Shown one piece after another: positions 1 through 62,472 of a stretch of 64,000 bases of DNA (position 1 is its first letter; each line of letters starts with the position of its first letter). The stretch is taken from contig NIVC01003053.1 in assembly GCA_002269645.1 (NCBI GenBank), positions 1-64,000 of the forward strand, read 5' to 3'. A model generated the notes under the pieces. The model was not told where the DNA came from, ran no database searches, and was given only the letters and a program-made list of their open reading frames with translations. Made by a program: the position numbers and the translations under genes. The DNA is from Macrostomum lignano (lineage: Eukaryota).

Positions 1-3000
1 CATAGTCTGTTAATACACTTTCAGTTATAATATCTTTGTCGACTGTTGCAACTGTTCGCACTGTGTGAGTTTCACATGTTGCAACGACATTTTCAACTCC
101 AAACTCTCGGCGTTCCACGCTATAGCCTGAGCCGAAATCCTCCATAAACTCGCCGGTTTGGCACAGCACATCATTGCGAGGAGCTGACTGTTCCAGTGTA
201 ACAACTTGTTGCTGAAAAACTTCTTCAACACGCTCTTCTTGCTCGAATTCTGTCTCTACATCAATGCAGTACACAACTGTTTGAACCTCTGCTGCATTTG
301 TATTAGCTCCAGTCCTTACTTCTGCTGTGCACGTTTCGACCTCTGCCTCGCCATCGAACTGAACCGCAGCGTTAGCGTAGTCGGTATCCGGCATGGATGA
401 AGAATCTTTTGTTTCGACCTTTATAATCGTGTACAGATCATCCACTGCATCCTGTTGAGGTTCATCTGGCTCTGCATGACCTTCAAACTGAACCGAACTG
501 TTTGTGAGAATTCCTTCCGTCTGAACTTCCCTTTCGGTAGAATTTTCCTTTCTTTCTTCGTGCGGTACTTTTGTTTCAAGACGAGCCACAACCAAGGCAT
601 TGCACGAATCCTCAGGCTCAAATTGAACGTGTGCTTCAGCTGTGAATACTGACGTCCTCATCTGTGACGTCTTTTTAACCTCCTGATCAGCCGGGTCAAC
701 CCTAGGAGGTGTACACTCGTGTATGGTTGTTTCAAACGTTTCCTTAACTTCTTCTTCAACGAATTCCGTTTGAGTAGAGACTTCTGGTAATTTTCGTTTT
801 CTTGAGCGTGAGCGAGATCTTCTATCTCTCAGTACTAGAGAGTTCATCTGGACTTGAGCAGATCTCTGTTCAGCTCTGTGACGCACGCTCGTTTCGCCGG
901 ATTCGGGTCTTGACTTTCGCGTTAAAGTATCCACTTCATCTGCAATGAACTGCATCGCAGTTGAGGCGCACTCAATCGAAGTTTGGCATTCTTGATCAGT
1001 AATCTCTGTACTTTTTTTAGCGGCGCGTAGCTTTCCGGCGTACTTTGGCCGTTGATTTTCGTCGAAGTCTTCGAAGTCGTATTCAACAGAAGCATCAGCG
1101 CTGTAACACATCGTTTGCGTGTCTACGGAATCACAAAAAGTCTTTGTTTGAACTTCGACCTCCAATGTCTCGATGGCTTCGCTTACAGACAACTTGCGAG
1201 GCGTTGAAGAAATCAATGAGCACTGTATAACCGAGTCTTCAGTTTGAATTGGCTGAGACAGATTGTCGGTTCTAGCAACTACGCTGGCTTCAAGTGTTTC
1301 AGTATCTGGCTCTGTATAGTGAGTGACTGGAAACATGACATTGTCAACATACTGCTGAATTTCTCTACTGTCAGTCTTGTCAGGTTCATCGCTGTCCGAT
1401 CTGACTTCTGATTTTTCATCATCCACTGTTTGTGTTTCACTTCTGGAATGAAGAGCAACTTCAAACACGCACATGCTACTCGTGACAGAAATGGGCCATT
1501 GTGTCTTTACAAGCACATCACAGACTTCTACTGAGTATTGGCCTGAACTCTCATCCATTTCCTCTTTTGTCTGGTTTCCTTGAGAAACTTTCCTTGACTC
1601 TAGCGATTCTAGCGATTCATATCGTACCTCAGAAGATTCATATTGGCCACTACTGTCCTCCATGAATGACTTTGTCTGGCAAAATTTGTTACTAACAACT
1701 GGAGCTGCTGTTTCAGCAAGTTGAGCTTGCACTATTGTAATAACTTCTTCGTCGTCCTTGATTACGTCAGTGGACGCATCGTCTATCTCTATGCAGCAGC
1801 TCGTCTGAACAGAAGCAGTTTCTGTTATCATCAAACAGGCAACTTCGGCCGTTTCAACGTCTGTTCCACTACTCTTAGCCACGTGGACGACTGGCATAAT
1901 GTCCCACTTGGGACAGTAGGGCGGCACTTCGGACTCTTCTTCTTGCGCTGACGCTTCAAACTGTTCGGTATTCGTACTGGCGTTCTTGATCTTAGAGAAC
2001 GGAACGCCTCTCTGAACTCGCTTTGCTTGGCGCGGGATCTCAATAGGATCGCATGCAGCTTCAGCGCTGTCGACATGCCTAGGAGATGGCTCCGACTGAA
2101 AATCGATGCTACACTGAACTTCGATGTCACAACAGTACTCGATAGTCTGGGTGCCGAAGTCTTCAAATTCATCGGAAAGTCGACGAGGTCCAAACTGTTT
2201 TTTAACGTTGCGCGGTGAATCATCGAACTGTTCTTGAGTATCGATGCTACACTGAACTTCGATGTCACAACAGTACTCGAAAGTCTGGGTGCCAAAGTCT
2301 TCAAATTCATCAGAAAGTCGACGAGGTCCAAACTGTTTTTTAACGTTGCGCGGTGAATCATCGAATTGTTCTTGAGCCAGAACGGCTATTTCGGCGCGGA
2401 AGGCAGCTGGACATCCATGCTGAATGCACTTTCCCTTGAACTCCTTCGTGCTTTCAACTGGTCCTGGCTGCACATCAAACTGGACTTCACTGTCACAGCA
2501 GTATTCAATGGTTTGAGTACCAAAATCTTCAAATTCAGTTGAAAGTCGACGAGCCCCAAATTGTTTCCTTGAAGTTCCGGGCGAATCGTCTGATCTTTCT
2601 AGTGCCAGAACACCCGCTTCCATTCGGAGGGCAGTTGGGCATCCATGCTGAATGCATTTTCCCTTAAATTCCTTCGTGCTTGTAACTGGTCCTGACTGAA
2701 CATCAATGCTACACTGAACTTCCATGTCACAGCAGTATTCAATGGTTTGAGTACCGAAATCTTCAAATTCAGTGGAAAGTCGACGAGCCCCAAATTGTTT
2801 CCTCGAAGTTCCGGGTGAATCTTCGGATTTTTCTTGTGCCAAAATACCCGCCTCGATTCGGAAGGCAGCTGGACATCCATGCTGAATGCGTTTGCACTTG
2901 AATTCTTTTGCGGTGGTAGGCTCTGTGCTCTGCAGCTGCATTTGTACTTCTTCAAAGATTTCTTCCGTTTCCGTATTTGAGCTTGCTTCGCGAGTCATCA

Positions 3001-6000
3001 ACCAAGGGCAGCCTCGCTGGATGGCCTTCATCATCACTTGAATGTCGTACTGATTTCCACTGTCGATCATTTCGGTCTTGTCTTGAGTCACTTGGTATGG
3101 CACAGCAGGGCTCTCTAAGCCAGCAGTGTCGCATCCAACAGCACTCAGCTCTGTGTAGCACTGAACTCCACAGTCAACAAGTGAAGCCTTTGTCTGCGGT
3201 TCAGGTGAACTACCAAGGCCCTCGGTATCGCACTCGACTTCGTATTTCATGCTCCATGGGCAGCCACGCTGAATGGCTTTTCTCGCTATCCCAACATCAA
3301 ATTGATTTCCACTTTCGACAAGATCGCTCCTCTTGACTGGCGTAGTGAACGGCGGGTCCATGTCTGCGCTGCACTCAACTTCGTGTAGCATTGAAAACGG
3401 ACAACCCTTTTGTATTACCTTGCCAATTGTTCCAGGGGGCAAAAATGTACTCGTACTGTCTTGAGTAGCAGCCTTGTAGGCAACCAATATCTCTCCAGAG
3501 TCCTTTTCAACCTGAACGATAGTGGGCTGCGTGAGTTCGACTTGAATTCCGAGTTCTTCTATTTCCTGGAAGGACTGCGTTGCTGCATTGCTGCATTGAG
3601 GCACAGAAGCAGATTGAACTGGCACAGTTACTTCAATTTGAGTTGGCTCAAACAATTCTACTTGGACTCCCCACTCTTGAACTTCTTGAAACGCTTGAGT
3701 TGTTGCATCGCGCTTGCGTACCGGGGCGGACTCGAACTTTGGCGCCTGGACTGCAGCCACAATTTCTGTATCCGGATCAGTTTCAGTTCCTACGTCGGAG
3801 TGCATGGCAAACGGACATCCATGCTGAATAGCTTTTCGGTGAAGATCTGCTTTTATGCTTGCCTTCACCATTGCATCTGAGTACTCGGCAGTTTTTAAAG
3901 TCTCCGGGAGCACATACTGATCGTAGGATCCATATTCGACGTAGTCCTCAGTCTCGAAATTCTCCGTGTTTGAAGCAACGTTGCGAACGGCAAACGATGG
4001 ACAGCCTCGTTGAATTGCTTTTGATTTCCAGGTGATTTCTGGAGTGCCGACGTTTTCATCGAGCTTGCTAACAACCAATGGTACGGGAATTTCGATTGTT
4101 TCCGCCTTTAGCGGTTCGGTATTGCAGTCGCCATCAACCATCATAAAGTAGGGGCAACCGTGCTGAATCACCTTATGCTTAGATTCTGATTTAAATGTTG
4201 TCTCTCTGTCCAGCATCAAGGATCGGTGCGATTGAGTTGCGATGCTGACTTTTTCAGGAGGCGGTGCAGATTCTACAAAGCGAATTTGAACTGGCACCTC
4301 TTCATCTTCGGTATTAGTACCTGTTTCAACCAATCTGAAGAAAGAGCAGCCATACTGCGACACTTTATTGTCAAGGTTTGCATCGAACGTCGTCGAAATA
4401 TCTTTCATCCGTACGCCAAATTCCATTTTCGTTTCGGCGAATTCTTTTTCTGGCCCAGTAGTCGGAGATGTCACAACCGGTTCATAGAGACGAGCTTGAA
4501 TTCCAACGCTTTCATATTGAGATTGTTGATACTGAGTACCTAAATCGGCCAGTTCAGGTCGGGGTGTAGACTCTACATGGCGCACCTGAACTTCTACTTC
4601 CTCGACTTGATCTGTATTACAGTAGTTTTCGACTCGGTTCGAAAATGGCGAGCCCAACTGAATAACTTTGTGCACATGAGTGACATCAAAGCCGGTTGAT
4701 AGTTCTTGCATTTCTACTCTGGCTTTTACCTCAGAATCGTACATCTCCTTCTCAGCGGGTTTGGTCGTGTCCACCTTGACTATTGCATCCTCACGAGCAA
4801 CACCAAAGCCAGTTGATAGTTCTTGCATTTCTACTCTGGCTTTTACCTCAGATTCGGACACCTCCTTCTCAACGGGTTTGGTCGTGTCCACCTTGATGAT
4901 CGCATCCTCACGAGCAACACCAAAGCCGGTTGATAGCTCTTGCATTTCTACCCTGGCTTTTACCTCAGAGTCGGACACCTCCTTCTTAACAGGTTTGGTC
5001 GTGTCCACTTTGATGATCGCATCCTCACGAGCAACACCAAAGCCGGTTGATAGTTCTTGCATTTCTACTCTGGCTTTTACCTCAGAATCGGACACCTCCT
5101 TCTTAACAGGTGTGGTCGTGTCCACCTTGATGATCGCATCCTCACGAGCAACACCAAAGCCGGTTGATAGTTCTTGCATTTCTACTCTGGCTTTTACCTC
5201 AGAATCGGACACCTTCTTCTCGACAGGTGTGGTCGTGTCCACCTTGATGATTGTATCCTCATGAGCAACACCAAAGCCAGTTGATAGCTCTTGCATTTCT
5301 ACTCTGGCTTTTACCTCAGATTCGGATACCTCCTTCTCGACAGGTGTGGTCGTGTCCACCTTGATGATTGTATCCTCATGAGCAACACCAAAGCCAGTTG
5401 ATAGCTCTTGCATTTCTACTCTGGCTTTTACCTCAGAATCGGATACCTCCTTCTCGACAGGTGTGGTCGTGTCCACTTTGATGATCGCATCCTGCAAAAA
5501 TGATTGCGTCTGGACCTCAATGTTTTCTGTGTCGGCTTTTGGCGCTGATTGCAGCTGGACGACCTCCCGGATGACCTCCGGTTCCTCAGCCGGATCGGTC
5601 TGGACAAACATCTCGGCTAGATTGAAAGCCGATGTTCCTTTTTGGATTCGCTTTGCTTTTTGATACGGTTTGACACGCACGTGCTCCTCTAAGCCTACTC
5701 TATTTGCGGCTGCCTCTAGATCTGAGACTTTCTGTGACAGTTGAGCAACAAGGCTCTCGTATGTGTGGCACACAACCTCCAGACTCTGGTAGTCGTAGTC
5801 CAGTGCCACGACACAAGCATCAGCTGTTTCTTTTGGCTGGGTAGCTTTAAAACCTTTTTCTATAGTTTTTGGGCTTTCAGAAGTAAACAGAACCTGAAGG
5901 CTCTTGTCATCGCTAGATTGGTCATATTGCGCGGCTCTGTCAAGCAGAGGGGACCAGTACTGGGTCTGCGATTCAATTATACTAACTTTGCCACGACGAG

Positions 6001-9000
6001 CGCACTCTGGGCACTGGCTTCTAAACAACAGGCTGTCGTCCTGATAAGAAAGGCGTTTGCTGGTTGCAGCCCCATCGACATGCTCCACTTGAGTCGTTAA
6101 AGCAACACGAACCGATTCCGACTTTAAGTCTTTCTCTACTTCTTTAGCCACGACACTAACCTCGGCACAGTCGGCATAGTACGCCGACATGACGTCTCGC
6201 TTCTCAGTTTTGCCAGTCTGACAAGCCCTATTTATTCCTTCACGCTGCTGCACGGCCATAACTTGAACAGCTGTCTCCGGCTCGATATCAGTCTCTTCTT
6301 CCGTGTCTTCAATTAGTAGCTGATCGGTCTGTGTTTCGCTCGAACTCCAGATAAACATTGTTTGACAGTCTTGCTCAAATCTGCTAACCGTTTGGTCAGT
6401 TAAGCTGTCTTCATCTGATGACGATTCTTCTGTCTGAATGGCTGAGTCGGAGTAGAAATTCCACGGTACTCCGAGCTGTACTCGCTTTGAAATCAGCTGT
6501 GGCGCAGCCTGTGAGCTGAAGTCTTCTCCTCGGGCGTGGTAATGCAAGCTGGATTCGTTCAGCTCGGGATCAAACTGGCTTGATAAATCGGATTGCACAG
6601 TTGTCTTCACTTTCATTTGGCTCTCCTGAGCGTTCGGCTTCACTATAACATTAATATCGGTCTGCGTGCTTCTAGCAATATCCGCCTCATCCATTGAGCG
6701 TTCAGTTTGAAAGCCTGACTCGATTAAACTTTCACTTTCGCTGTCCATAGCCACAGTTTGAACGCTGTTATTTAAAGAAGCACTTGGCGCAAAGCCGCAG
6801 GCGGACTCCTTCATGGTCGGAGCAGAGTGCGTCTGGCATTGGAAATCTATCATTTCAGCCCTCGGTTTCTCAAACTGGGTCTCCAAGCCAACCTGCACAT
6901 GGCCAGTGGCTTCGAATCTCTCTGTCTGAATACCGAAGGTGCTGGAGCTAGCATTGAAAAATTGGGCATCGGTGTCTTGCATGGCCGAAACAACTTGCGT
7001 GCTTTTGTTCACTTGCTCAGTTGGTTCCATTTTTAGAGGTGCCTGCTCCACCTGCACAATTGTTTCGACTTCTTCCTCAGTTTGGCTAAACGCATTGTGC
7101 GATGACGCCAGGAGGACGTAGTGAGTACTGACATCCCTCATTTTCGTTGTACTCACGCTCTGAGCTGAAGCTATTGCGGAAACAGTTTGTGAGGAAACGT
7201 CCGACTTTTCGTCGAATACCCGAGCTACAATTCTGCTATCCGAACTCTCCAGCGCCGCTTCGGCCTCCGACGAAGAGGCAACAACACCGGGAACAAGAGT
7301 GGCAGAGTTTGCTGTCTTGAGGTAGTACTGCCCGCTGGAATCAACCATGACCCGAGAACCGGCCAAGGCACTGGCTGTTTTACCGAGCGGCTGAACGCGA
7401 GCGCTCTCATCTTGAGCATCAACTGTCTGGCTGAACACCGCCACAGACTCCCAGTGGCAATATCTGTTGATAAACCTTTGTCTGATGCATACAGCACGAA
7501 CTCGCTCTGGACGTCCCGCAGGGGTCCACGAGTCGATCGTGTTTTTGAGGTACTACTTTCAACAACAGTCTGCGATGTAACGTCGCGTGTTTCTGTTACC
7601 ACCTTGGCTATTATACTCTTTTCGGAACTCGACAGATGGCTTTGAGCTTCGGTCTCGGAGACGACTTGACCACGAACCATCATTCCAGTATCGGCACTGG
7701 CTAAGTAGTACTGTCCGGCACTGTCGCACATTAACTTGGATTGAGCAAAGGTGCTTTCAGCTAGTCTTGTTTTTGTTTGCGTGGCAAAGTCCTCTGAGGT
7801 CTTTACTGCATGTACATCCGCTGTAATGCTCTTATTAGACGAGTAAAGAGAATACTGCGTGTTCACTTCTGAAAGAGTAGAGCCGCTTTGTGTGGCAGCT
7901 TGCTTAGAGTCAGGGACTTGTGGTTGATGCGTCTGTACTGTAAAGTCTCTAGTATCGCTGCTGACTCTTGCAACAATGCTTCTCTCTGAAGTAGCCAAGT
8001 AGTTCTTAGCGTCGGATTCCGTAACCGGTTTGCCAGAAATGATCACACTACTGTCAGCGCTGGACAAGTAGTATTGGCCTGAGCTGTCTCGCATCAGCTT
8101 CGGCTGGTATTGGCTGCCTGCGTCGACATAGTCACCATCAACTTGCACCGAAAAATCTTCGCTGCGACTAGCTAGCATGGACAAGTCTTTAGTTGCGGAG
8201 TACAACTCGTACTGCTGCCGTTCTGCAACGATTTCCTCTTCCGTGGCAACAGTTTGGGTAGTGAAATCTCGAGCATTGCCGACGATTCTCGCCACAATGC
8301 TTTTCTCCGATGTGCTGAGGTGATGCCGCGCCTCAGACTCAGTCACAACTTTTCCTAGAACTCTGACGGCAGAATCCTGACTCGTCAAGTAGTACTGACC
8401 TGCACTGTCTCGCAGGAGACTTGGCTTTGACGCAGCACTGTGAACGCTGACCATTTTGGTCTGCGTGGCGAAATCCTCAGAAGATTTAACAAATTCAGCT
8501 GTTTGGCTCTTGCTAGATGAGAATAGATCATACTGTGCGTGTACGTCTGTGAGTTCATTTGTGCCGCTCTGCGTTCCACTCTCCTTTTTAACGGGGCGAG
8601 CGAGAGACGCTGTTTGAGTCGAGAAATCTTTTCCTTCATCTGAAACTCGAGCAACTATGTTCTTTTCAGAAGTATCTAGGTAGTACTGCGCCTCAGCCTC
8701 CGTCAGTGACTGGCCCTGCACCGCCACGCCTGCAGTGGAGCTCACCAGATAGAACTGCCCAGAGCTGTCCTTCATTAGTTTGGCCTGCGACACTGCCGCA
8801 TCAGAGTAGTCTAAATTGGCTTGAGTGCCAAACTCTTCCGAGCTTCTTACGTCCGCAGTTGCTAGCGACTTGTTAGACGAATAAAGGACGTACTGCTGCT
8901 CGCTGGAAATCAACTCGCGTCTGCTGTCTTCCTGAGCAGTTTGAGACGTGACGTCTCTGAATTTACTAATCACTCGAGCTACAATGTTGTTCTCAGAAGT

Positions 9001-12000: not shown

Positions 12001-15000
12001 CGGAGTCATGAGTGCGGTCAGATCCTTGTCAGATTTGAATAGGATGTACTGCGCTTGCCCATCCTGAGTTGTGCTCGACGCTTGCAGACTGGCGTCTCTG
12101 ACAGTCGGTGCCAAATTAGTACTCATGTACTTATCAGACTGCTGAGATATATACTGTGCCTGGTGTTCTTGAGTTGTGCTAGACGCTTGCAGGCTGGCGT
12201 CTCTGACAGTCGGTGCCAAATTAGTACTCATGTACTTATCAGACTGCTGAGATATATACTGTGCCTGGTGTTCTTGAGTTGTCCTAGACGCTTGCAGGCT
12301 GGCGTCTCTGACAGTCGGTGCCAAATTAGTACTCATGTACTTATCAGACTGCTGAGATATATACTGTGCCTGGTGTTCTTGAGTTGTGCTAGACGCTTGC
12401 AGGCTGGCGTCTCTAACTGTCGGAGTCAGTAGTGTCGATAAATCCTTGTCTGAATGGAACAGTACGTACTGAACTTGACTTTCTGTAGTGGATCGGCTGG
12501 CCTGTTGACTGGCATCTTTCACCGGGCTAAGCAATGTATTCAAGTCTTTGTCCGACTGGAACAAGAGGTACTGCGCGTGGCCTTCTCTGGTTTGGGTTGA
12601 TGCTTGGAGACTGGCGTCTCGAGTGTCGCTCGTTGTTAGCGCCGATAGGTCTTTGTCCGATTGGAAGAGCACATACTGCGCCTGACTCTCGGTAGTGACT
12701 CTAGAAGCTTGCTGGCTAGCGTCTCTCAATTTTGGACTCATCAAGGCCGTCAGGTCTTTGTCTGACTGGAACACCAAGTACTGAGTCTGACCCTCTGTCA
12801 TCGTCCGAGAGACTTGCATGCCGGCGTCTCGCATTTTTGGCTCTAGCATGACCGACAGGTCTTTGTCCGATTTGAACAAAACGTACTGCGTATGACCCTC
12901 CGTGGTCAGAGCCGACGCCTGAGTGCTAGAGTCGGTAACAGCCGTCGAGTCTTTGTTCGACTGAAAAATGACGAACTGCGTGTCGGTGTCGCGCGAGCGG
13001 GTCTGCAAACCTGCTTGGCAGCTTCTGTCTCTGAGGATGAGCCTCTGCTGCAGTTCAGCTCGGAGCTCCTCCGTATCCAAGCGCTTCAGCCAATTGACGC
13101 TGTCCGTAGCATCTACCGGCTGACTCACCGCCCGCACCTTTTCCTCCGTCTGCCAGTCTTCGTCCAAGTCGATTTCGACAATTCTTGGTCCAGAGAACTC
13201 CAAAGCGGTGTCCTTGAGCGCCCAAGACGTTTGGATGGCGTGGTCGATTTGGCTCAGGCTTTGCTCCTCCGTCGCGACTTGAAAGAACGCGCTGGCCTCT
13301 CCGGAGTCCGGCATCGTCTGGATGGCGTGCTCTCGACCTTCGACTTGGCTGTACTGACTGCCCGATTGGGTGGCTGGCAGCCGTGTGCTCAGCATTAGCG
13401 TGTCGTTGGTAGAGTACCGAGTCTGGACGCCGTGGTCCGCCCGCTCGCTGTCGAACTGACTACCCGAGTGCTCCGTGACCAGGCGCTGAGACACCGCCGA
13501 ACTCAACAAGCCACCGCCGACTCCCACGGTCTGAATTCCGTGCTCCATAGCTGAGGGTCGCTGCGCTGTAACGCTCGAGTCGGCCGTGGCGAAGCCAGTC
13601 TGAATTCCGTGATGCTGCTGGCTGGCCGCGATTCGCGTTTGGATGCCGTGCTCCGCCCGGCGGCCGACGCTGCGCTCCGTCGTCTGCAACGCCGCCTCGC
13701 GAGTGCCGGCCTGAGTAGTTTGCAGACCGCGCGAGTGCTGCTGCAGCCACTGGCGACCGACGACGTTGTCGGCGACACTTTCGCGGGCGGAGGACGAGGC
13801 TACCGAAGACAGCTCGCTCCAGCGGGCCTCGTCGACGCCCGCCTGTCGTAAGCCGGCAGCGGCGGCTTCGTTGAACTCGGACTGACGGGCACGCTGCGAC
13901 GGCAGCTGGAACTGCAGAAGCCCCGCGACAGTGTCGCCGCCGGTAGCCGCATGAGCGGACATCAGCACCTCCTGGCGGCGCAGCTTGCGCACGTGGCGGC
14001 GCTGTTCGGCAGCCTGGCCAGCTCGCCAAGCGTTCAGTTTGGCGAAGAGCGACTCCAGTTGCTCCTGGCCGCTGGCTTGGAGAGTCCTGCGGAATAGCGA
14101 TTGCATTGCTGGCTAGATGGGTTGCTACCGACTGTCTAGAGATGTACTAAGCATCTTTGATGGCTGTTGACTGACGATTGATAGCTCATTGATAGATGAT
14201 GATAACTTATTGATTGATTGATTGGTTTGTTGATTGATTGATAATTGATTGGTGATTGATTGATGATTTCTTGATTGATTTATCGATTGATGTTTTATTG
14301 ATGATTGATTGGTGATTTGTTGATTTATGATTGATTGACATAATAATTGATGATTGATTTCGAGATGTATGTAATTGCTAATCATCTGAGAGCTGACTAT
14401 TTGTAAATGCAAATTGTTTGCGGACTTGATGAAGGAACTGCTGCTCAACACCATCCAAAACTATGCTCAATACTCACTCTAGCAGAGCGATGGAATTATG
14501 CAGCTCAGGCTTGGAGCAGTCCAGCTCAGTCAGCCAGTACTCGGAGCCGCGCACGGCCAGAGACTGGCGCCGGAACGACTCCCAGTACTTGATGTGCGAC
14601 TCCAGCTTGGCCAGCAGGCTCCTCAGCTGCACAATTTCAGCCTCTTTGAGCAGCACTCGCTTCCTCGAGCCGCGTTTCGACGGGTCGTTGCGTCGGTCCA
14701 ACTGAGCGAGGGTCTGCAGCACCGAACGGAACCGATCGTCGTCTCCAAAGATATTGTACACCTCCTGCTTGAGCAGCTGCCACTGCTCGGGGCTCTCAAA
14801 TTCGGCGTAGTCGTGAGCGGACAGGTGGCGGAAGAGCAAGGTGAGGTAGTCGCACAGCACCGTCTGGAACCGGGCCGCTGAGCTGCCCCAGAGAGACAGG
14901 AATTTCTCCTCCAGCCTGCGGAATGACAAATCATCACGTTTGAGACAGGGGAATTCTTTTTTTGGGATCGGGGAATCCCTTTAGAACAAGATAAAATAAA

Positions 15001-18000
15001 ACAAATTTGAACTGGGAATCTCAGTTGGAATGGGGGAATCCTGTTTATTATGGGAATTTGGATTGGAATGAAAGAATAAGATGCCTAAATTTGGTATTAG
15101 GGAATCCGTGTCAATAATGGGGAAATTCGAGTCGATACGGGAGAATAAAAGTTAATAAAGAGGGAATCAATTTTAATATTTGGAAAATTCAATTTAATAA
15201 ATGGGGAATCCAATTCAGTACTTAGGGAATCCAAGCAATTAATGAGGGAATCCAATTTAAAAAAGGAAGAATCCTATTTATTTATTGAGAATCCAATTTA
15301 ATAATTGGGGAATCCGATTCAATAATTGAGGAATCCGATTCAATAATTGAGGAATCCGATTCAATAATTGGGGAATCCGATTCAATAATTGAGGAATCCG
15401 ATTCAATAATCGGGGAATCCGATTCAATAATTGAGGAATCCGATTCAATAATTGGGGAATCCGATTCAATAATTGAGGAATCCGATTCAATAATCGGGGA
15501 ATCCGATTCAATAATTGAGGAATCCGATTCAATAATTGGGGAATCCGATTCAATAATTGAGGAATCCGATTCAATAATCGGGGAATCCGATTCAATAATT
15601 GAGGAATCCGATTCAATAATTGGGGAATCCGATTCAATAATTGAGGAATCCGATTCAATAATTGGGGAATCCGATTCAATAATTGGAGAATCCGATTCAA
15701 TAATTGGGGAATCCGATTCAATAATTGGGGAATCCGATTCAATAATTGGAGAATCCGATTCAATAATTGGGGAATCCGATTTAATAACTGGGGAATCCTT
15801 ATTTTCTTTTAGAGAAGAGGGTGAATTTCTTTTAGAACTGGGGAGAATTTGTATAGGGAGAATACTCTACTCACTTCAGCGCCAGCTCGGTCGCGCCGAG
15901 ATCAGGCGGAGGCAGCCACAGCATGATAGAAGGCACGTCGAAGCTGGCTGCCTCGCCATCCTCAGACTCGTAGGAGACCCGCCAGAGCAGACTGTCCGAG
16001 TTGTCAAGCAGGGTGAGCTCGGTGCCCTCCTCGAATCGGCCGATCGAGTTCTCGAATGGGCACAGCAGCAGGGCCGGCCGGGGCTGTCGGGTGGGTTCGA
16101 GTCTCTGCTGCACCTAGGTGTAGGGATGATGAATGGTTTTATGGACTATGTGGATTGCTAATCTATCCAATCATATTGATAAAGGAATAGAATGGATTGC
16201 TAATCTAACCAATCGTATTGATAAAGGAATAGAATGGATTGCTAATCTAGCCAATCATATTGATAAAGGAATAGAATGGATTGCTAATATAGCCATTCAT
16301 ATTGATAAAGGAATAGAATGGATTGCTAATCTAGCCATTCATATTGATAAAGGAATAGAAATATAGAATGGATTGCTAATCTAGCCAATCATATTGATAA
16401 AGGAATAGAATGGATTGCTAATCTAGCCATTCATATTGATAAAGGAATAGAATGGATTGCTAATCTAACCAATCGTATTGATAAAGGAATAGAATGGATT
16501 GCTAATCTAGCCAATCATATTGATAAAGGAATAGAATGGATTGCTAATCTATCCCTAACTCACTGGCACAACCCGCCGGCTAGCAGACACCACAGTCTGC
16601 ACCCGCTGCCAGAGGCACAGGAACTCCGACAGCTGGCTCTGCATGAAGGTCTTGATGGAGTCGGTTTCTCGCACAATCGGCTTGGGCGAGAAGGCGCTGA
16701 GCCAGTGCTCCAGCTGGTGCCAGCGGTCTTTCAGCAGCAGGAAGGTGTCCCGGTAGTCGAAGAAGAACTGATGATAGTCTGAGGCGTTTCTGGTGTGCAC
16801 GCGGGTCAGGTCGGTGAGCCGCTGCACCTGCGACCAGCAGTCGGTCACGCCCTGGCTTGTCACCTTGTCACCGTGCGGATGGTCACGCATGGCCTTGGCG
16901 CGGGCCATAACAGTGTGCATCAGTTTCTGGGGGGATAGGGTAGCGTTCAGTAGAAGTGTAGTACAGTAGAGTAGATCTGAATAGAGTAGAGTAGGGTAGA
17001 TCTGAGTAGAGTACAGTAGAGTAGATCTGAGTAGAGTAGAGTAGAGCAGAGTAGATCAGAGTAGAGTAGATCTGAGTAGAGTAGATCTGAGTAGAGTACA
17101 GTAGAGTAGATCTGAGTAGAGTAGAGTAGAGCAGAGTAGATCAGAGTAGAGTAGATCTGAGTAGAGTAGAGTAGATCTGAGTAGAGTAGAGTAGATCTGA
17201 GTAGAGTAGAGTAGAGCAGAGTAGATGAGAGTAGAGTAGAGCAGAGTAGAGTAGATTAGATCTGAGTAGAGTAGAGTAGAGCAGAGTAGATCAGAGTAGA
17301 GTAGATCTGAGTAGAGTAGAGTAGATCTGAGTAGAGTAGATCTGAGTAGAGTAGATCTGAGTAGAGTAGATCTGAGTAGAGTAGAGTAGAGCAGAGTAGA
17401 TCAGAGTAGAGTAGATCTGAGTAGAGTAGAGTAGATCTGAGTAGAGTAGAGTAGATCTGAGTAGAGTAGAGTAGATCTGAGTAGAGTAGAGTAGAGCAGA
17501 GTAGATGAGAGTAGAGTAGAGCAGAGTAGAGTAGATTAGATCTGAGTAGAGTAGATCTGAGTAGAGTAGATCTGAGTAGAGTAGATCTGAGTAGAGTAGA
17601 GTAGATCTGAGTAGAGTAGAGTAGAGTAGATCTGAGTAGAGTAGAGTAGAGTAGATCTGAATAGAGTAGAGTAGATCTGAATAGAGTAGAGTAGATCTGA
17701 GTAGAATAGATCTGAGTAGAGCAGAGTAGATCTGAGTAGAGCAGAGTAGATCAGAGTAGAGTAGATCTGAGTAGAGTAGATCTGAGTAGAGTAGATCTGA
17801 GTAGAGTAGATCTGAGTAGAGTAGATCTGAGTAGAAAAGATCTCTGAGTCGGATGGAACAGAGCAGAGTAGAATATATCAGAGCACTAGTAACAGCCATC
17901 ATTACCGTGAAGTCGTCCTCCAGTCCTGCAATCCGCTGCAGATAACCAACGCACTTCTTGTTCTGGTGAATCTCGCCTTTGATGCTCTCGCTCTCCTTCA

Positions 18001-18838
18001 GCAGGCGGGCCTCGGTGTCGCCCTGTTGGGGTTGCGAAGGGGAGGGTTCAATGTTGAACATCAGCTAGCCATCGGCAGCTCAAGTACCATGAAGCACTGA
18101 AAGTTCAATGGACGATTCTCACCCGGACTCCATCGCAGATCTGCTTCTCTATATCGAAGAGGCGAGTCTCCAAATCTTTTTGAAGCTCGCCAGCCTCGCC
18201 CAGAAACAAATTGTTGTCCCCGAATCGAACTCTGGTCGCTTCGTCCTGCGAGCGGTGTTCGGGTTTATGTGGGTCTTTGTTAGATATAATCTTAGGAGAA
18301 TTATTTCAGTTGTTCGAGTGTAACAGGTAACAGTTCAAGTCTAACAGGTAACAGTTCGAGTCTAACAGGTAACAGTTCGAGTCTAACAGGTAACAGTTCG
18401 AGTCTAACAGGTAACAGTTCAAGTCTAACAAGTAACAGTTCGAGTCTAACAGGTAACAGTTCAAGTCTAACAGATAAAACACCAGTCTAACATGTAAAAC
18501 CTACCCCAGTCTAACAGGTAAACACCTGTATAACAGGTAAAACCCCCAGTCTAACAGGTAAAACACCAGTCTAACAGGTAAAACACAGAGGTCTAACACG
18601 TAAAACCCACCCCAATCTAACAGGAAAAACCCCAGTCTAACAGGTAAAACCCGATTCTAACAGGTAAAACACCAGTATAACAGGTAAAACCTCAGTCTAA
18701 CAGGTTAGAATTTAAACAAATTCAACTCCAATGTTAACAGAGAAATTCTCAAGAGTCAAGTATTATAACAAAATATCATGGACTCACCTTGATAGCTCGA
18801 AGAGCATCTTCAAGCTGCACCTCCACCTCTGTCCCCAT
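1..18838 (-). CDS. Giant plakin-family protein (spectrin repeats + plakin SH3) with a very long repetitive tail; 3'-incomplete, >5,100 aa in window
   Basis: Phase-consistent GT-AG exons: 18838-18788 (MGTEVEVQLEDALRAIK), 18290-18123, 18064-17906, 16926-16564, 16113-15875, 14915-14478, 14086-<1. Exon 4 (CWSQVQRLTDLTRVHTRNASDYHQFF...VVSASRRVVP) and exon 5 (LLCPF...GTELTLLDNSDSLLWRV...VPSIMLWLPPPD) match the plakin spectrin-repeat and SH3 pattern of plectin/desmoplakin/dystonin. Confidence 0.8.
2..7444 (-). CDS. Giant exon of the plakin gene, part after the frameshift; runs off the window edge
   Basis: Spot translation at 7444, 5460, 2160, 660 and 2-60 gives open sequence in one frame (VAVFSQTVDAQ..., EVQTQSFLQDAIIKVDTTT, DEFEDFGTQT, VATVDKDIITESVLTDY). 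The ORF track reports nothing in this frame, as expected if no stop occurs before the edge. Not every codon was checked. Confidence 0.8.
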   Translation of the reverse strand, partial: MAVFSQTVDAQDESARVQPLGKTASALAGSRVMVDSSGQYYLKTANSATLVPGVVASSSEAEAALESSDSRIVARVFDEKSDVSSQTVSAIASAQSVSTTKMRDVSTHYVLLASSHNAFSQTEEEVETIVQVEQAPLKMEPTEQVNKSTQVVSAMQDTDAQFFNASSSTFGIQTERFEATGHVQVGLETQFEKPRAEMIDFQCQTHSAPTMKESACGFAPSASLNNSVQTVAMDSESESLIESGFQTERSMDEADIARSTQTDINVIVKPNAQESQMKVKTTVQSDLSSQFDPELNESSLHYHARGEDFSSQAAPQLISKRVQLGVPWNFYSDSAIQTEESSSDEDSLTDQTVSRFEQDCQTMFIWSSSETQTDQLLIEDTEEETDIEPETAVQVMAVQQREGINRACQTGKTEKRDVMSAYYADCAEVSVVAKEVEKDLKSESVRVALTTQVEHVDGAATSKRLSYQDDSLLFRSQCPECARRGKVSIIESQTQYWSPLLDRAAQYDQSSDDKSLQVLFTSESPKTIEKGFKATQPKETADACVVALDYDYQSLEVVCHTYESLVAQLSQKVSDLEAAANRVGLEEHVRVKPYQKAKRIQKGTSAFNLAEMFVQTDPAEEPEVIREVVQLQSAPKADTENIEVQTQSFLQDAIIKVDTTTPVEKEVSDSEVKARVEMQELSTGFGVAHEDTIIKVDTTTPVEKEVSESEVKARVEMQELSTGFGVAHEDTIIKVDTTTPVEKKVSDSEVKARVEMQELSTGFGVAREDAIIKVDTTTPVKKEVSDSEVKARVEMQELSTGFGVAREDAIIKVDTTKPVKKEVSDSEVKARVEMQELSTGFGVAREDAIIKVDTTKPVEKEVSESEVKARVEMQELSTGFGVAREDAIVKVDTTKPAEKEMYDSEVKARVEMQELSTGFDVTHVHKVIQLGSPFSNRVENYCNTDQVEEVEVQVRHVESTPRPELADLGTQYQQSQYESVGIQARLYEPVVTSPTTGPEKEFAETKMEFGVRMKDISTTFDANLDNKVSQYGCSFFRLVETGTNTEDEEVPVQIRFVESAPPPEKVSIATQSHRSLMLDRETTFKSESKHKVIQHGCPYFMMVDGDCNTEPLKAETIEIPVPLVVSKLDENVGTPEITWKSKAIQRGCPSFAVRNVASNTENFETEDYVEYGSYDQYVLPETLKTAEYSDAMVKASIKADLHRKAIQHGCPFAMHSDVGTETDPDTEIVAAVQAPKFESAPVRKRDATTQAFQEVQEWGVQVELFEPTQIEVTVPVQSASVPQCSNAATQSFQEIEELGIQVELTQPTIVQVEKDSGEILVAYKAATQDSTSTFLPPGTIGKVIQKGCPFSMLHEVECSADMDPPFTTPVKRSDLVESGNQFDVGIARKAIQRGCPWSMKYEVECDTEGLGSSPEPQTKASLVDCGVQCYTELSAVGCDTAGLESPAVPYQVTQDKTEMIDSGNQYDIQVMMKAIQRGCPWLMTREASSNTETEEIFEEVQMQLQSTEPTTAKEFKCKRIQHGCPAAFRIEAGILAQEKSEDSPGTSRKQFGARRLSTEFEDFGTQTIEYCCDMEVQCSIDVQSGPVTSTKEFKGKCIQHGCPTALRMEAGVLALERSDDSPGTSRKQFGARRLSTEFEDFGTQTIEYCCDSEVQFDVQPGPVESTKEFKGKCIQHGCPAAFRAEIAVLAQEQFDDSPRNVKKQFGPRRLSDEFEDFGTQTFEYCCDIEVQCSIDTQEQFDDSPRNVKKQFGPRRLSDEFEDFGTQTIEYCCDIEVQCSIDFQSEPSPRHVDSAEAACDPIEIPRQAKRVQRGVPFSKIKNASTNTEQFEASAQEEESEVPPYCPKWDIMPVVHVAKSSGTDVETAEVACLMITETASVQTSCCIEIDDASTDVIKDDEEVITIVQAQLAETAAPVVSNKFCQTKSFMEDSSGQYESSEVRYESLESLESRKVSQGNQTKEEMDESSGQYSVEVCDVLVKTQWPISVTSSMCVFEVALHSRSETQTVDDEKSEVRSDSDEPDKTDSREIQQYVDNVMFPVTHYTEPDTETLEASVVARTDNLSQPIQTEDSVIQCSLISSTPRKLSVSEAIETLEVEVQTKTFCDSVDTQTMCYSADASVEYDFEDFDENQRPKYAGKLRAAKKSTEITDQECQTSIECASTAMQFIADEVDTLTRKSRPESGETSVRHRAEQRSAQVQMNSLVLRDRRSRSRSRKRKLPEVSTQTEFVEEEVKETFETTIHECTPPRVDPADQEVKKTSQMRTSVFTAEAHVQFEPEDSCNALVVARLETKVPHEERKENSTEREVQTEGILTNSSVQFEGHAEPDEPQQDAVDDLYTIIKVETKDSSSMPDTDYANAAVQFDGEAEVETCTAEVRTGANTNAAEVQTVVYCIDVETEFEQEERVEEVFQQQVVTLEQSAPRNDVLCQTGEFMEDFGSGYSVERREFGVENVVATCETHTVRTVATVDKDIITESVLTDY
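2030..2900 (-). repeat. Coding repeat, 4 copies (SPRNVKKQFGPRRLSDEFEDFGTQTIEYCCDIEVQC-like)
   Basis: Anchor TCGACGAG at 2180, 2318, 2546 and 2780 (spacings 138, 228, 234 bp). Confidence 0.85.
4680..5495 (-). repeat. Coding tandem repeat, 117 bp / 39 aa, about 7 copies
   Basis: Anchor TCGTGTCCAC at 4765, 4882, 4999, 5116, 5233, 5350, 5467. Unit IIKVDTTTPVEKEVSDSEVKARVEMQELSTGFGVAREDA. Confidence 0.95.
7445..14086 (-). CDS. Giant exon of the plakin gene, part before the frameshift (ORF-track 7225..14106 frame)
   Basis: Acceptor ctattccgcAG|G at 14087/14086 is phase 2, matching the donor at 14477. Open frame of about 2,200 codons made of 35-aa and roughly 105-135-aa repeats. Confidence 0.85.
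12055..12430 (-). repeat. Coding tandem repeat, 105 bp / 35 aa, about 3.5 near-identical copies
   Basis: Unit TNLAPTVRDASLQASSTTQEHQAQYISQQSDKYMS, embedded in a longer degenerate 35-aa series (about 11400-13000). Confidence 0.9.
14155..14365. repeat. Degenerate (GATT)n microsatellite in plakin intron 6
   Basis: Runs of ttgattgattg. Confidence 0.8.
15180..15800. repeat. 21-bp minisatellite GGGAATCCGATTCAATAATTG in plakin intron 5
   Basis: More than 20 near-perfect copies at 15305-15795, degenerate copies on the left. Confidence 0.95.
16148..16555. repeat. 42-bp minisatellite filling plakin intron 4
   Basis: Unit GATTGCTAATCTAGCCAATCATATTGATAAAGGAATAGAATG, about 9-10 copies. Confidence 0.95.
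16960..17835. repeat. Pentamer satellite (AGTAG / ATCTG / AGCAG) in plakin intron 3
   Basis: Continuous agtagagtagatctg pattern. Confidence 0.95.
18320..18705. repeat. About 21-bp minisatellite (GTCTAACAGGTAACAGTTCGA and variants) in plakin intron 1
   Basis: Tandem copies with a TCTAACAGGTAA core. Confidence 0.9.
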
Positions 18839-19844: not shown

Positions 19845-20815
19845 AAAGACAGGCGCCATTAGAGACAGGCGCCATCAGTGACAAGCGCCATCAGAGACAG
19901 ACGCCATTAGACAGGCGCCATCAAAAAGAGGGGCCGTTTGAGACAGACGCCATCAGTGACAGGCGCCATCAGAGACAGGCGCCATCAGAGACAGGCGCCA
20001 TCAGAGACAGGCGCCATCAAAGAGAGGGGCCGTTTGAGACAGACGCCATCAGAGACAGGTGCCATTAGAGATAAGCGCTATTAGAGACAGGCGCTATCAG
20101 AGACAGGCGCCATTAGACAGGCGCCATCAGAGACAGGCGCCATTAGACACGCGCCATAAGAGACAGGCGCCATTAGAGACAAGCGCTGTCAGAGACAGGA
20201 CAGGCGCCATTAGACACGCGCCATCAGAGACAGGCGCCATTAGACAGGCGCCATTAAAAAGAGGGGCCGTTTGAGACAGACGCCATCAGAGACAGGTGCC
20301 ATTAGAGATAAGCGCTATTAGAGACAGGCGCTATCAGAGACAGGCGCCATTAGACAGGCGCCATCAGAGACAAGTGCCATTAGAGATAAGCGCTATTAGG
20401 GACAGGCGCTATCAGAGACAGGCGCCATTAGACAGGCGCCATCAGAGATAAGCGCCATCAGAGACAGGCGACACATTAGACAGGCGCCATCAAAGAGGCG
20501 CCGTTAGAGACAGACACCATCAGAGACAGGCACCACCAGAGACAGGCGCCATTAGACAGGCGCCATCAGAGATAAGCGCCATCAGAGACAGGCGACACAT
20601 TAGACAGGCGCCATCAAAGAGGCGCCGTTAGAGACAGACACCATCAGAGACAGGCACCACCAGAGACAGGCGCCATTAGACAGGTGCCATCAGAGATAAG
20701 CGCCATCAGAGACAGGCGACACATTAGACAGGCGCCATCAAAGAGGCGCCGTTAGAGACAGACACCATCAGAGACAGGTACCACCAGAGACAGGCGCCAT
20801 TAGACAGGTGCCATC
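19845..20815. repeat. GGCGCC-containing minisatellite (AGAGACAGGCGCCATC / ATTAGACAGGCGCC) with 124-bp higher-order units
   Basis: Dozens of 13-16 bp monomers. Variant GCGACACATTAG recurs at 20468, 20592, 20716. Confidence 0.9.
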
Positions 20816-37145: not shown

Positions 37146-37200
37146 AGTTAGTTCCCACTAAGGATCCGATAAAAGGTCTCAGTGATACAACTTAGAAATT

Positions 37201-62269: not shown

Positions 62270-62299
62270 CTGCAGTGTGGGTGTGCTAAAATTGGACTG

Positions 62300-62432
62300 G
62301 CTGACTGAAAGACAGACAGACACAGACAGATAGACAGACAGACAAACAGACAGACACAGACAGGCAGACAGACAGACCGACAGACAGACAGACACAGACA
62401 GGCAGACAGACAGACAGACAGACAGGCAGACC

Positions 62433-62472
<40 letters not shown>

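What the first reader, a model, noticed from the sequence alone, without database searches (positions are those of the whole stretch)
1..18838. Giant plakin-headed protein with a multi-kilodalton tail studded with LC8-type TQT motifs
Seen: six small exons encode about 470 aa containing plakin spectrin repeats and the plakin SH3, with no recognisable actin-binding domain. They join a single exon of at least 14,086 nt (about 4,700 aa). That exon is Ser/Thr/Gln/Asp/Glu-rich and holds dozens of motifs such as DFSTQT, DFATQT, DFGTQT, RDVTSQT, EHGIQT, HAIQT and EREVQT. Established: [K/R/D]xxTQT and GIQ[T/V] motifs in disordered regions are the binding sites of the dimerising hub LC8/DYNLL, and multivalent partners such as ASCIZ carry around ten. 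Inference: this could be an undescribed cytolinker in which LC8 dimers zip two very long tails into a semi-rigid rod, replacing the usual plakin coiled-coil/spectrin rod.
Basis: partly seen in the sequence, partly recalled or inferred. Interest (0 to 1): 0.82.

Follow-up and report, generated by a model that had tools for sequence, protein, structure and literature searches.

The report
Giant flatworm plakin with LC8-type motifs
This is a real but badly annotated Macrostomum lignano gene for a giant (>5,100 aa) plakin-family cytoskeletal linker. Its orphan, repeat-built tail carries far more dynein-light-chain LC8 docking-type motifs than chance allows, but whether LC8 binds them is untested.

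Summary
On the minus strand, six small GT-AG exons (18838-14478, 444 aa) encode a short plakin head. The SH3_10 match has E 3.5e-11, and the head resembles the desmoplakin plakin domain 3R6N (E 1e-13). They join one exon from 14086 to the contig end. The gene is M. lignano BOX15_Mlig027648g1, annotated 'hypothetical' and truncated at 2730 aa. The truncation comes from one missing G at 7450-7452, which both paralogs possess. With that base restored, the ORF is at least 5,139 aa, and a paralog stays open for another 2.2 kb. dN/dS between paralogs is 0.23-0.25, so it is coding.

The tail is a mosaic of repeat families, not one disordered thread. One family has 12 modules, each a 47-aa folded core plus a low-confidence linker that carries DFxTQT.

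A PSSM built from 66 verified LC8 sites gives 43 hits. Shuffled tails give 6.6 and the reversed tail 15. Published position rules pass 25 sites; 12 pass both filters. Context matches the LC8 consensus (D at -4, T/I/V at -1), with near-identical verified precedents (bassoon AEFSTQTP, Nup159 ADFDVQTS).

LC8 laddering is plausible, most of all at the six-site HGIQT array beside the head. It is unproven, and sites about 100 aa apart argue against a continuous rigid rod. No orthologues were found.

The parts
18788..18838 (-). Coding exon 1 (MGTEVEVQLEDALRAIK); ATG at 18838
   Evidence: Exact match to PAA53624.1. Donor GTGAGT.
18123..18245 (-). Coding exon 2 (aa 18-58)
   Evidence: tblastn and splice mapping. 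AG acceptor, donor GTGAGA.
17906..18022 (-). Coding exon 3 (aa 59-97)
   Evidence: Splice mapping. Donor GTAATG.
16564..16926 (-). Coding exon 4 (aa 98-218): plakin spectrin repeat (SR4-like, 'DYHQFF')
   Evidence: Aligns to desmoplakin 3R6N and plectin 3PE0. Splice sites.
15875..16113 (-). Coding exon 5 (aa 219-297): plakin-type SH3
   Evidence: Pfam SH3_10 (PF17902), E 3.5e-11, 43.4 bits.
14478..14915 (-). Coding exon 6 (aa 298-443): spectrin repeat following the SH3 (SR5/6-like)
   Evidence: Its first ~20 aa lie in the 3R6N alignment, which ends at aa 318. The SR5/6 label for the rest rests on position after the SH3, not on a match. Splice sites.
2..14086 (-). Giant exon 7 (aa 444 to at least 5139); it runs off the contig end
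   Evidence: Open frames 14112-7228 and 7552-2. Window position 1 is the contig end. The paralog L003 continues for 2.2 kb or more. pN/pS is 0.13-0.38 in every sub-region.
7450..7452 (-). One-base frameshift: GGG here, GGGG in both paralogs. It causes the annotated protein to end falsely at 7228.
13225..13656 (-). Array of six [E/D/H]-H-[G/A]-[I/V]-Q-T motifs (aa 588-731), with anchor glutamines 13-36 aa apart, about 145 aa after the plakin head
   Evidence: Four of the six pass the published LC8 position rules. PSSM scores are 3.8-8.7 bits.
11221..12981 (-). About sixteen 35-aa repeats: [TA]QY[VIL]LFQSDKDLS...RDASLQAS. The Q-anchored motif is degenerate here (LQA, not TQT).
6965..11220 (-). 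Twelve modules of 102-138 aa. Each has a 47-aa core (KLMKDSSGQYYL..VAVQG..VTESEA..HL.SSEKNIVARV) and a linker carrying [KR]DFxTQT, TQYxLYSSNKSL and SEDFxTQT.
   Evidence: Alignment A1. In the AF2 model the core has pLDDT about 80 (three strands, a helix, a strand) and the linker is mostly below 50.
4683..5493 (-). 6.9 near-identical 39-aa repeats (IIKVDTTTPVEKEVS...), with no QT motifs
   Evidence: TRF period 117. Translation.
2894..4669 (-). Region with recurrent K-x-I-Q-[RH]-G-C-P-[FW]...NTE motifs
   Evidence: The pattern occurs 13 times against 0.1 in shuffles.
2024..2893 (-). Four 76-78-aa Cys-rich repeats, each with EDFGTQT[IF]EYCCD
   Evidence: The AF2 run was uninformative (pLDDT 44, four-row alignment).
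2..2023 (-). Acidic distal tail with scattered single QT motifs (PEVSTQTE, TEREVQTE, DSVDTQTM, ETASVQTS...)

Best explanation
What it is (shown). The locus is a functional, Macrostomum-restricted member of the plakin cytolinker family.
- Its head is a shortened plakin domain (spectrin repeat, SH3, spectrin repeat).
- No CH actin-binding domain, coiled-coil rod or plakin repeats are detectable.
- One exon of more than 16 kb encodes a tail of more than 5,400 aa, built by repeated tandem duplication of several unrelated short units.
- At least part of the tail alternates small folded 47-aa units with flexible acidic S/T/Q-rich linkers.
- The tail carries Q-anchored 8-mers that fit the LC8/DYNLL binding consensus in every region except the start of exon 7 and the 39-aa repeats. 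Twelve pass two independent filters, and 25-43 pass one.

How it probably works (inferred). Each LC8 homodimer binds two such strands, so LC8 would pair two parallel chains in register.
- The tight six-site HGIQT array just after the head would act like the Nup159 DID or the KANK1 L2. It would form a short stiff dimerising stalk where other plakins have their coiled-coil rod.
- The sparser DFxTQT sites, about one per 100 aa, would add rungs along a long, flexible, beaded double strand.

The 2730-aa GenBank model is truncated by a one-base indel that is probably an assembly error.
For: Gene reality:
- Canonical splice sites.
- Three paralogous copies share the model.
- dN/dS is 0.23 and 0.25 over about 4,600 codons, and 0.13-0.38 in every tail region.
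- The frameshifts are private 1-nt indels at different places in each copy.

Head: SH3_10 at E 3.5e-11; desmoplakin 3R6N at E 1.2e-13.

Tail architecture. The AF2 model gives the core pLDDT about 80 and the linker below 50.

LC8-likeness:
- PSSM from 66 verified sites: 43, 25 and 16 hits at the 10th, 25th and 50th percentile of known sites. Shuffles give 6.6, 2.2 and 0.6; the reversed tail gives 15, 9 and 1; the head gives 0.
- 39 of the 43 hit 8-mers are unique sequences.
- D at -4 is enriched 5.9x, and F or H at -3 more than 6x.
- The published rules say -3 wants a large side chain and -4 wants Asp (PMC6607443).
- 25 sites pass those rules, against 7.6 +/- 2.6 in shuffles.
- Verified near-identical sites exist in bassoon, Nup159 and syntaphilin.
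- Motif codons show 0/372 and 1/372 amino-acid changes between paralogs, against 61/4238 and 37/4313 elsewhere.

No coiled coil: a crude heptad scan covers 28 of 5,139 residues, against 277 of 284 for a tropomyosin control.

Precedent for LC8 making rods from a disordered cytoskeletal linker: KANK1 (PMC12803091).
Against: - No binding data and no LC8 docking could be run here.
- Jespersen et al. stress that many TQT peptides do not bind LC8.
- Many DFxTQT copies, including all four EDFGTQT[I/F], have a disfavoured hydrophobic +2 residue.
- HGIQT sites score only 3.8-8.7 bits, because H at -3 has no precedent in the training set.
- The 35-aa repeat family carries RDASLQAS in place of the motif, so the ancestral unit need not have been an LC8 site.
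- Tail composition is borderline ordered, and disorder is shown only for the module linkers.
- The reversed-tail control still gives 15 hits, so composition and the palindromic TQT explain part of the signal.
- The paralog constraint signal is weak (p = 0.006 and 0.18), and synonymous changes are also fewer in motif codons.
- No orthologue was found, so conservation across species is unknown.
Confidence: 0.5

Rival explanations
1. The QT motifs are a structural signature of beta-strand-rich repeats. The same would hold for the equally recurrent xQ[YF]VLF, GQYYL and K.IQ.GCP motifs. On this view they are not LC8 docking sites. The tail would be a fibrous or beaded structural domain whose strands pair with each other or with unknown partners, and the resemblance to LC8 motifs would be coincidental.
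For: - Each repeat family named here has its own conserved Gln followed by a beta-prone stretch.
- Composition is at the order/disorder boundary, with 22-29% hydrophobic residues.
- The low-confidence AF2 model of the Cys repeat pairs the KxIQH strand with the TQTIEYCC strand.
- The N-terminal half of the module core hits generic beta-hairpin repeats in bacterial adhesins.
- RDASLQAS variants lack the TQT anchor.
- A hydrophobic +2 residue in many copies suits a buried strand.
Against: - QT motifs with D at -4 recur in at least five unrelated sequence contexts, including non-repetitive stretches.
- The directional flank signal is strong: 16 forward hits against 1 reversed at the median-score threshold.
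- With the same 12-row alignment, AF2 folds the core but not the motif-bearing linker.
Confidence: 0.3
2. The conserved glutamines are transglutaminase acyl-donor sites. The protein would then be a cross-linkable scaffold comparable to the envoplakin/periplakin/involucrin system of the vertebrate cornified envelope.
For: - The head is of the desmoplakin/envoplakin/periplakin type, lacking an actin-binding domain.
- The tail has 8.2% Gln and an invariant Q in every repeat family.
- That envoplakin, periplakin and involucrin are transglutaminase substrates comes from my own knowledge. It was not tested here.
Against: - Nothing in the flanks is specific to transglutaminase, whereas they fit the LC8 consensus position by position.
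- No evidence on tissue or cross-linking is available.
Confidence: 0.07
3. The giant 'exon' is a decaying pseudogene or a mis-annotated repeat-rich intergenic ORF, and the frameshifts are real.
For: - The window copy has a frameshift at 7450.
- The two other copies have several 1-2-nt indels each.
- All database models are truncated at different points.
Against: - dN/dS is about 0.24 overall and below 0.4 in every region.
- Frames stay open for more than 2,000 codons between indels.
- Each indel is private to one copy, and several sit in short homopolymer runs. This fits consensus errors in a long-read assembly.
- In-frame 3-nt indels are shared between copies.
Confidence: 0.05

Closest known systems
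Plakin family without an actin-binding domain (desmoplakin, envoplakin, periplakin)
   Same: The N-terminal plakin domain has an SH3 embedded between spectrin repeats. SH3_10 matches at E 3.5e-11 and the best PDB relative is desmoplakin 3R6N. No CH domains were found.
   Different: - The head is only about 440-500 aa (roughly SR3-SR6) rather than about 900 aa.
- There is no coiled-coil rod.
- There are no plectin/plakin repeats (no PF00681 hit at E <= 1), and no Pfam GAR or EF-hand hit either.
- The tail is an orphan mosaic of more than 5,400 aa encoded by one exon.
Multivalent LC8/DYNLL clients that form ladders or rods: Nup159 DID, ASCIZ, KANK1 L2, and bassoon as a giant scaffold
   Same: - They carry clusters of Q-anchored 8-mers in low-complexity sequence.
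- The HGIQT array (six sites in 145 aa) has Nup159/ASCIZ-like spacing.
- DFSTQT is nearly identical to bassoon AEFSTQTP and Nup159 ADFDVQTS.
- KANK1 shows that LC8 can stiffen a cytoskeletal linker through 15 or more weak sites (PMC12803091).
   Different: - Binding here is only predicted.
- Most sites are about 100 aa apart and are separated by folded units.
- The -3 residue is F or H rather than K or R.
- The scale is far larger: 12-43 candidate sites over about 4,700 aa, against 5-15 sites over 100-600 aa.
Giant repeat-built flatworm proteins encoded by single large exons (for example the M. lignano adhesion proteins Mlig-ap1/ap2, PMC6410801)
   Same: They are lineage-restricted, very large, tandem-repeat-rich proteins in the same species (resemblance from my own knowledge).
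   Different: Those proteins are secreted gland products. This one has a cytoplasmic plakin head, and I saw no signal-peptide-like N-terminus (by eye, not run through a predictor). No sequence similarity was tested or seen.

Membership tests
Plakin family | Plakin domain: spectrin repeats with an embedded SH3 (SH3_10) | tested here: met
   PF17902 matches at E 3.5e-11, above its gathering score. phmmer against PDB finds desmoplakin 3R6N at E 1.2e-13, covering SR4-SH3-SR5, and plectin 3PE0 at E 4e-7.
Plakin family | C-terminal plakin (plectin) repeat domains or GAR domain | tested here: not met
   Pfam scans of both halves of the tail at E <= 1 give no PF00681 or GAR hit. Foldseek of the module model against PDB has its best hit at E 1.2. 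The module profile against PDB sequences has its best hit at E 0.35. Caveat: the true C-terminus lies beyond the contig end.
Plakin family | Central coiled-coil rod (desmoplakin/plectin type) or long spectrin-repeat rod (spectraplakin type) | tested here: not met
   A crude heptad scan covers 28 of 5,139 residues, against 277 of 284 in a tropomyosin control. No Spectrin Pfam hits. No dedicated coiled-coil predictor was run.
Plakin family | N-terminal calponin-homology actin-binding domain (optional; absent in desmoplakin, envoplakin and periplakin) | tested here: inconclusive
   All three paralog models start at the same ATG. The 6.2 kb upstream, up to the neighbouring ACAD gene, is mostly minisatellite and stop-ridden in all three frames. 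A formal Pfam scan of that stretch could not be run.
Multivalent LC8/DYNLL client | 8-residue motif with a [T/V/I]-Q-[T/V] anchor and compatible flanks (-4 polar or Asp, -3 large, -2 not aromatic, +2 not hydrophobic) | tested here: met
   43 PSSM hits against 6.6 in shuffles. 25 sites pass the rules against 7.6 in shuffles. 12 pass both. Rules from PMC6607443; training sites from PMC5746249 S1 Table.
Multivalent LC8/DYNLL client | Motifs lie in intrinsically disordered, accessible regions | tested here: inconclusive
   Module linkers are mostly below pLDDT 50 while the adjacent core is about 80. The Cys repeat is uninformative. Composition-based measures are borderline. No IUPred was available.
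Multivalent LC8/DYNLL client | Physical binding to the LC8 dimer groove | not testable with these tools
Multivalent LC8/DYNLL client | Island-like conservation of the motifs among orthologues | tested here: inconclusive
   No orthologues were retrieved. Among the 12 internal modules, Q of the first DFxxQT is at least 90% conserved while the linker around it varies. Between paralogs there are 0-1 changes in 372 motif codons (p = 0.006 and 0.18).

The most novel reading that the evidence does not exclude
This would be the largest multivalent LC8 client known, and the first plakin that dimerises and is stiffened by LC8 rather than by a coiled coil. A Nup159-like six-site LC8 stalk would sit at the head-tail junction, followed by dozens of further LC8 rungs along a beaded tail of more than 5,400 aa. 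A further and more speculative possibility is that the other recurrent Q-anchored motifs (xQ[YF]VLF, K.IQ.GCP) are docking strands for other members of the dynein-light-chain-fold family.
Probability: 0.3. Interest if true: 0.75.

Novelty: new variant of a known kind. Interest (0 to 1): 0.55.

Why it matters
If LC8 really zips this tail, three things follow.
- The principle that a hub protein converts disorder into a rod would extend from linkers of 100-600 aa (Nup159, ASCIZ, KANK1) to a megadalton cytolinker.
- It would show an alternative evolutionary route to dimerising a plakin.
- It would provide a natural library of about 40 divergent LC8 sites with an unusual aromatic or His -3 residue, useful for refining motif predictors.

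M. lignano supports transgenesis and RNAi, so this could be tested directly. Independently of LC8, the analysis corrects the database models. They are truncated by indels, and the real protein is at least twice the annotated length.

Tried and rejected
- **Plakin repeats in the tail.** The 47-aa core loosely resembles a plectin repeat by eye (G-x-x-V-T-E-S-E-A-x-x-x-L). Pfam, Foldseek against PDB and a profile search of PDB sequences all find nothing. Rejected.
- **Orthologue searches.**
  - Word-indexed searches with both halves of the tail found only the M. lignano cluster.
  - An exhaustive HMM search of 1.84 billion representative proteins with the module profile found only the query cluster, plus nine weak hits. 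The three I read were bacterial repeat proteins sharing a generic D-x-S-G-Q-[FY]-x-[IL] hairpin; the other six (E 5e-6 to 7e-4) were not inspected. Not treated as homologues.
  - The search with the head returned nothing at all, not even the query itself.
- **Recovering the true C-terminus.** Two of the three paralog contigs end inside the exon. The third was still open at the 10-kb flank limit.
- **AF2 on the Cys/EDFGTQT repeat.** The four-row alignment is too shallow and the result (pLDDT 44) is uninformative.
- **In-phase alignment of four-unit windows of the 35-aa repeats for AF2.** MAFFT aligned the overlapping windows out of phase. Abandoned.
- **Literature.** No paper mentions the three locus tags, Macrostomum plakins, or a link between plakins and LC8.
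- **Protein-level paralog comparison.** Differences were inflated by repeat misalignment. I replaced it with a codon-level comparison.
Full report
**Identity and gene structure**

The window is the first 64 kb of Macrostomum lignano contig NIVC01003053.1 (assembly GCA_002269645.1). Window coordinates equal contig coordinates. The feature lies on the minus strand and corresponds to BOX15_Mlig027648g1 (PAA53624.1). GenBank calls it a 2730-aa 'hypothetical protein' and UniRef calls it 'Desmoplakin SH3 domain-containing protein'.

Mapping that protein back onto the window gives seven coding exons, all with GT donors and AG acceptors:
- 18838-18788
- 18245-18123
- 18022-17906
- 16926-16564
- 16113-15875
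- 14915-14478
- 14086 down to position 2

The six small exons encode 444 aa.

**The frame break**

The giant exon is not one intact ORF in this sequence. One frame is open from 14112 to 7228 and another from 7552 to 2.

The switch is a single missing G in a GGGG run at 7450-7452. Both paralogous copies have the G (L001 on NIVC01000890.1, L003 on NIVC01000392.1). The paralog protein P0003 reads straight through it ('...DIATGESVAVFSQT...').

Each copy carries its own private 1-2-nt indels at other places. In-frame 3-nt indels, by contrast, are shared between copies. That pattern points to consensus errors in a long-read assembly (inference).

With the G restored, the window encodes at least 5,139 aa. 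The ORF runs off the contig end. In L003 it continues for a further 2.2 kb and is still open where the fetched flank stops. That stretch consists of near-identical ~125-aa repeats, which probably explains why two of the three contigs break there.

**Is it coding?**

Codon-wise comparison of exon 7 with the two paralogs gives dN/dS of 0.23 and 0.25 over about 4,600 codons. The ratio is 0.13-0.38 in each of six sub-regions. The whole tail is under purifying selection, so a pseudogene or junk ORF is unlikely.

**The head**

- Exon 5 matches Pfam SH3_10, the plakin SH3, at E 3.5e-11.
- Residues 108-318 align to the desmoplakin plakin domain (3R6N, E 1.2e-13) and to plectin (3PE0, E 4e-7) across SR4-SH3-SR5.
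- Pfam's generic Spectrin model does not fire.
- No CH domain is evident. All three paralog models start at the same ATG. The 6.2 kb up to the next gene, an acyl-CoA dehydrogenase at 25.1-28.6 kb, is mostly minisatellite.

**Tail architecture**

The tail is 12% S, 9% each of T, E, V and A, 8% Q and 6.5% D. It has no Pfam hit. It is a mosaic of repeat families, not a uniform thread.

| Part | Residues | Content |
|---|---|---|
| i | 588-731 | six [E/D/H]H[G/A][I/V]QT motifs, 13-36 aa apart |
| ii | about 813-1399 | about sixteen 35-aa repeats, [TA]QYVLFQSDKDLS...RDASLQAS |
| iii | 1400-2818 | twelve modules of 102-138 aa |
| iv | 2819-3300 | non-repetitive stretch |
| v | window 4683-5493 | about seven 39-aa repeats |
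| vi | mostly 3584-4175 | region studded with K-x-IQ-[RH]-GCP-[FW]...NTE; 14 copies across aa 2978-4466 |
| vii | 4176-4465 | four Cys-rich 78-aa repeats carrying EDFGTQT[IF]EYCCD |
| viii | 4466-5139 | acidic distal part |

In the 12 modules, the conserved core is KLMKDSSGQYYL.S.DS.V.V.G..VTESEA...L.SSEKNIVARV. The invariant positions are D5, G8, L12, G23 and L35. The core is followed by [KR]DFxTQT, a variable spacer, TQYxLYSSNKSL, and usually SEDFxTQT.

AlphaFold2 on one module, using the 12 modules as its alignment, gives two clearly different parts:
- The core has pLDDT about 80 and folds as three strands, a helix and a strand.
- The linker after it is mostly below 50 (block means 45-57).

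The core has no structural match in PDB (best Foldseek E 1.2). It has no sequence match to PDB chains. It has no homologue among 1.84 billion representative proteins. The nine weak hits (E 4e-10 to 7e-4) were not treated as homologues; the three I read are bacterial repeat proteins sharing a generic hairpin.

Composition-based order/disorder measures are borderline for every tail region.

A crude heptad scan finds essentially no coiled coil.

**Are the motifs more than chance, and are they LC8-like?**

Simple counts exceed composition-matched shuffles:

| Pattern | Observed | Shuffled mean |
|---|---|---|
| TQT | 18 | 3.1 |
| DF.TQT | 11 | 0.0 |
| [GA]IQT | 7 | 0.1 |

Tandem duplication inflates such counts, so I applied three stricter tests.

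Test 1, a PSSM. I built it over positions -5 to +2 from the 66 non-redundant, experimentally verified LC8 sites in S1 Table of Erdős et al. 2017 (PMC5746249). I calibrated it by leave-one-out scoring.

| Threshold (percentile of known sites) | Tail | Shuffled tail | Reversed tail |
|---|---|---|---|
| 10th (8.7 bits) | 43 | 6.6 +/- 2.2 | 15 |
| 25th (10.9 bits) | 25 | 2.2 | 9 |
| 50th (13.3 bits) | 16 | 0.6 | 1 |

- The head has 0 hits at all three thresholds.
- The reversed tail keeps both the repeats and the palindromic TQT, so it is a stringent control.
- 39 of the 43 hit 8-mers are unique sequences.

Test 2, flank context. The residues around all 67 QT dipeptides are directional and consensus-like:
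- D at -4 (26 of 67; 5.9x enriched)
- F or H at -3
- G at -2
- T, I, V or C at -1

Jespersen et al. 2019 (PMC6607443) state that -4 favours Asp, -3 favours large side chains, -2 excludes aromatics and +2 disfavours hydrophobics.

Test 3, the published rules. Applying them literally passes 25 tail sites. Shuffles give 7.6 +/- 2.6 and the reversed tail 12.

Twelve sites pass both filters:
- IDHAIQTS
- KDFSTQTD
- EDFSTQTR
- RDVTSQTA
- KDFSTQTA
- EDFATQTK (two copies)
- EDFSVQVD
- STFGIQTE
- IARSTQTD
- PEVSTQTE
- TEREVQTE

Verified sites elsewhere are almost identical:
- bassoon AEFSTQTP
- Nup159 ADFDVQTS, NFSVQTF and ESGIQTD
- syntaphilin ERAIQTD
- PAC11 DKGIQTD

Weak points:
- The HGIQT class scores only 3.8-8.7 bits, because H at -3 has no precedent in the training set.
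- The four EDFGTQT[I/F] copies and several module copies have a hydrophobic +2 residue.
- The 35-aa family carries RDASLQAS instead of a TQT anchor.

Between paralogs, motif codons show 0/372 and 1/372 amino-acid changes. Other codons show 61/4238 and 37/4313 (one-sided Fisher p = 0.006 and 0.18). Synonymous changes are also scarcer in motif codons, so this is only a hint.

**Interpretation**

*Shown:* a real giant plakin-family gene with a short plakin head. No detectable ABD, rod or plakin repeats. An orphan repeat-mosaic tail in which at least the module linkers look flexible. A strong, directional enrichment of LC8-consensus 8-mers.

*Inferred:* LC8 dimers pair two chains.
- The six-site array about 145 aa after the head has Nup159-DID/ASCIZ-like spacing. 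It sits where other plakins place their dimerising coiled coil, which makes it the most persuasive candidate.
- Elsewhere, sites are about 100 aa apart and interleaved with folded 47-aa beads.

The concept of LC8 converting a disordered cytoskeletal linker into a rod is already published for KANK1, with 15 or more sites over 600 aa (PMC12803091). No paper connects plakins with LC8 or mentions this gene.

**Rivals**
1. The Q-anchored motifs are structural beta-strands of a fibrous repeat protein. This is favoured by the parallel xQ[YF]VLF, GQYYL and K.IQ.GCP motifs, the borderline composition and the hydrophobic +2 residues.
2. The glutamines are transglutaminase donor sites, as in the envoplakin/periplakin/involucrin system. 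This rests on my own knowledge and was not tested.
3. The exon is a pseudogene or artefact. The dN/dS values contradict this.

**Verdict**

The motif case is quantitatively good, but binding, disorder outside the modules and conservation across species remain open.
- This is a new variant of known kinds: the plakin family and multivalent LC8 clients.
- It is of moderate interest now, and of high interest if binding is shown.

Noticed in passing
window ~2050-6490 (-), aa 2978-4466: A second recurrent short motif, K-x-[IV]-Q-x-G-C-P-[FWAY], is usually followed within about 10 aa by [ST]-N-T-E. There are 14 copies, 45-330 aa apart, and a slightly looser pattern gives 13 matches against 0.1 in shuffles. 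I know of no binding partner for it.
   Followed up: partly
window ~7830-12980 (-), aa 813-2530: A third recurrent motif, [TA]-Q-[YF]-[VIL]-L-[FY]-x-S-[DN]-K-[DS]-L, has at least 25 copies. It is shared by the 35-aa repeats and the 12 modules, which suggests the two families derive from a common unit.
   Followed up: partly
window 1; L001 end; L003 31770-33983: Window position 1 is a contig end inside the giant exon, and a second paralog contig ends at nearly the same point. The third contig shows near-identical ~375-nt coding repeats there (TVGVNQKPS...CAQTD...SIQTQ...QCQTR...CVQTS). These probably broke the assembly. The true stop codon was not reached.
   Followed up: partly
window 46761-47627 (+) and 47817-48809 (-): Two ORFs in inverted orientation, 190 bp apart, each match Phage_integrase (tyrosine recombinase) and DUF3504. 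This may be a Crypton-like element or a duplicated domesticated recombinase.
   Followed up: no
window 31159-32655 (+): An apparently intronless 499-aa ORF matches the amiloride-sensitive sodium channel family (ASC/DEG-ENaC, E 1.8e-43).
   Followed up: no
window 25096-28626 (-): The upstream neighbour on the same strand is an acyl-CoA dehydrogenase-like gene (AidB_N / ACDH-11_C domains). It has the same position in all three paralogous loci, so the duplication is segmental or genome-wide.
   Followed up: no
window 15192-15798, 16151-16551, 16960-17843, 19847-20815, 21383-24610, 36454-44995, 62310-64000: Minisatellites fill several introns and intergenic stretches. Examples are a 20-nt unit repeated 161 times at 21383-24610, a 17-nt purine-rich unit repeated 97 times at 39508-41132 (which creates spurious ORFs of more than 700 aa in three frames), and (AGAC)n from 62310 to the window end.
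   Followed up: no
window 51309-54381 (-) and 61721-62596 (-): There are exons of an RRM protein (RRM_5/RRM_10, PTB/hnRNP-L-like) and of an ELMO/CED-12 domain protein.
   Followed up: no
tool behaviour: The word-indexed homology search with the 494-aa head returned no hit at all, not even the database entry that contains it.
   Followed up: no
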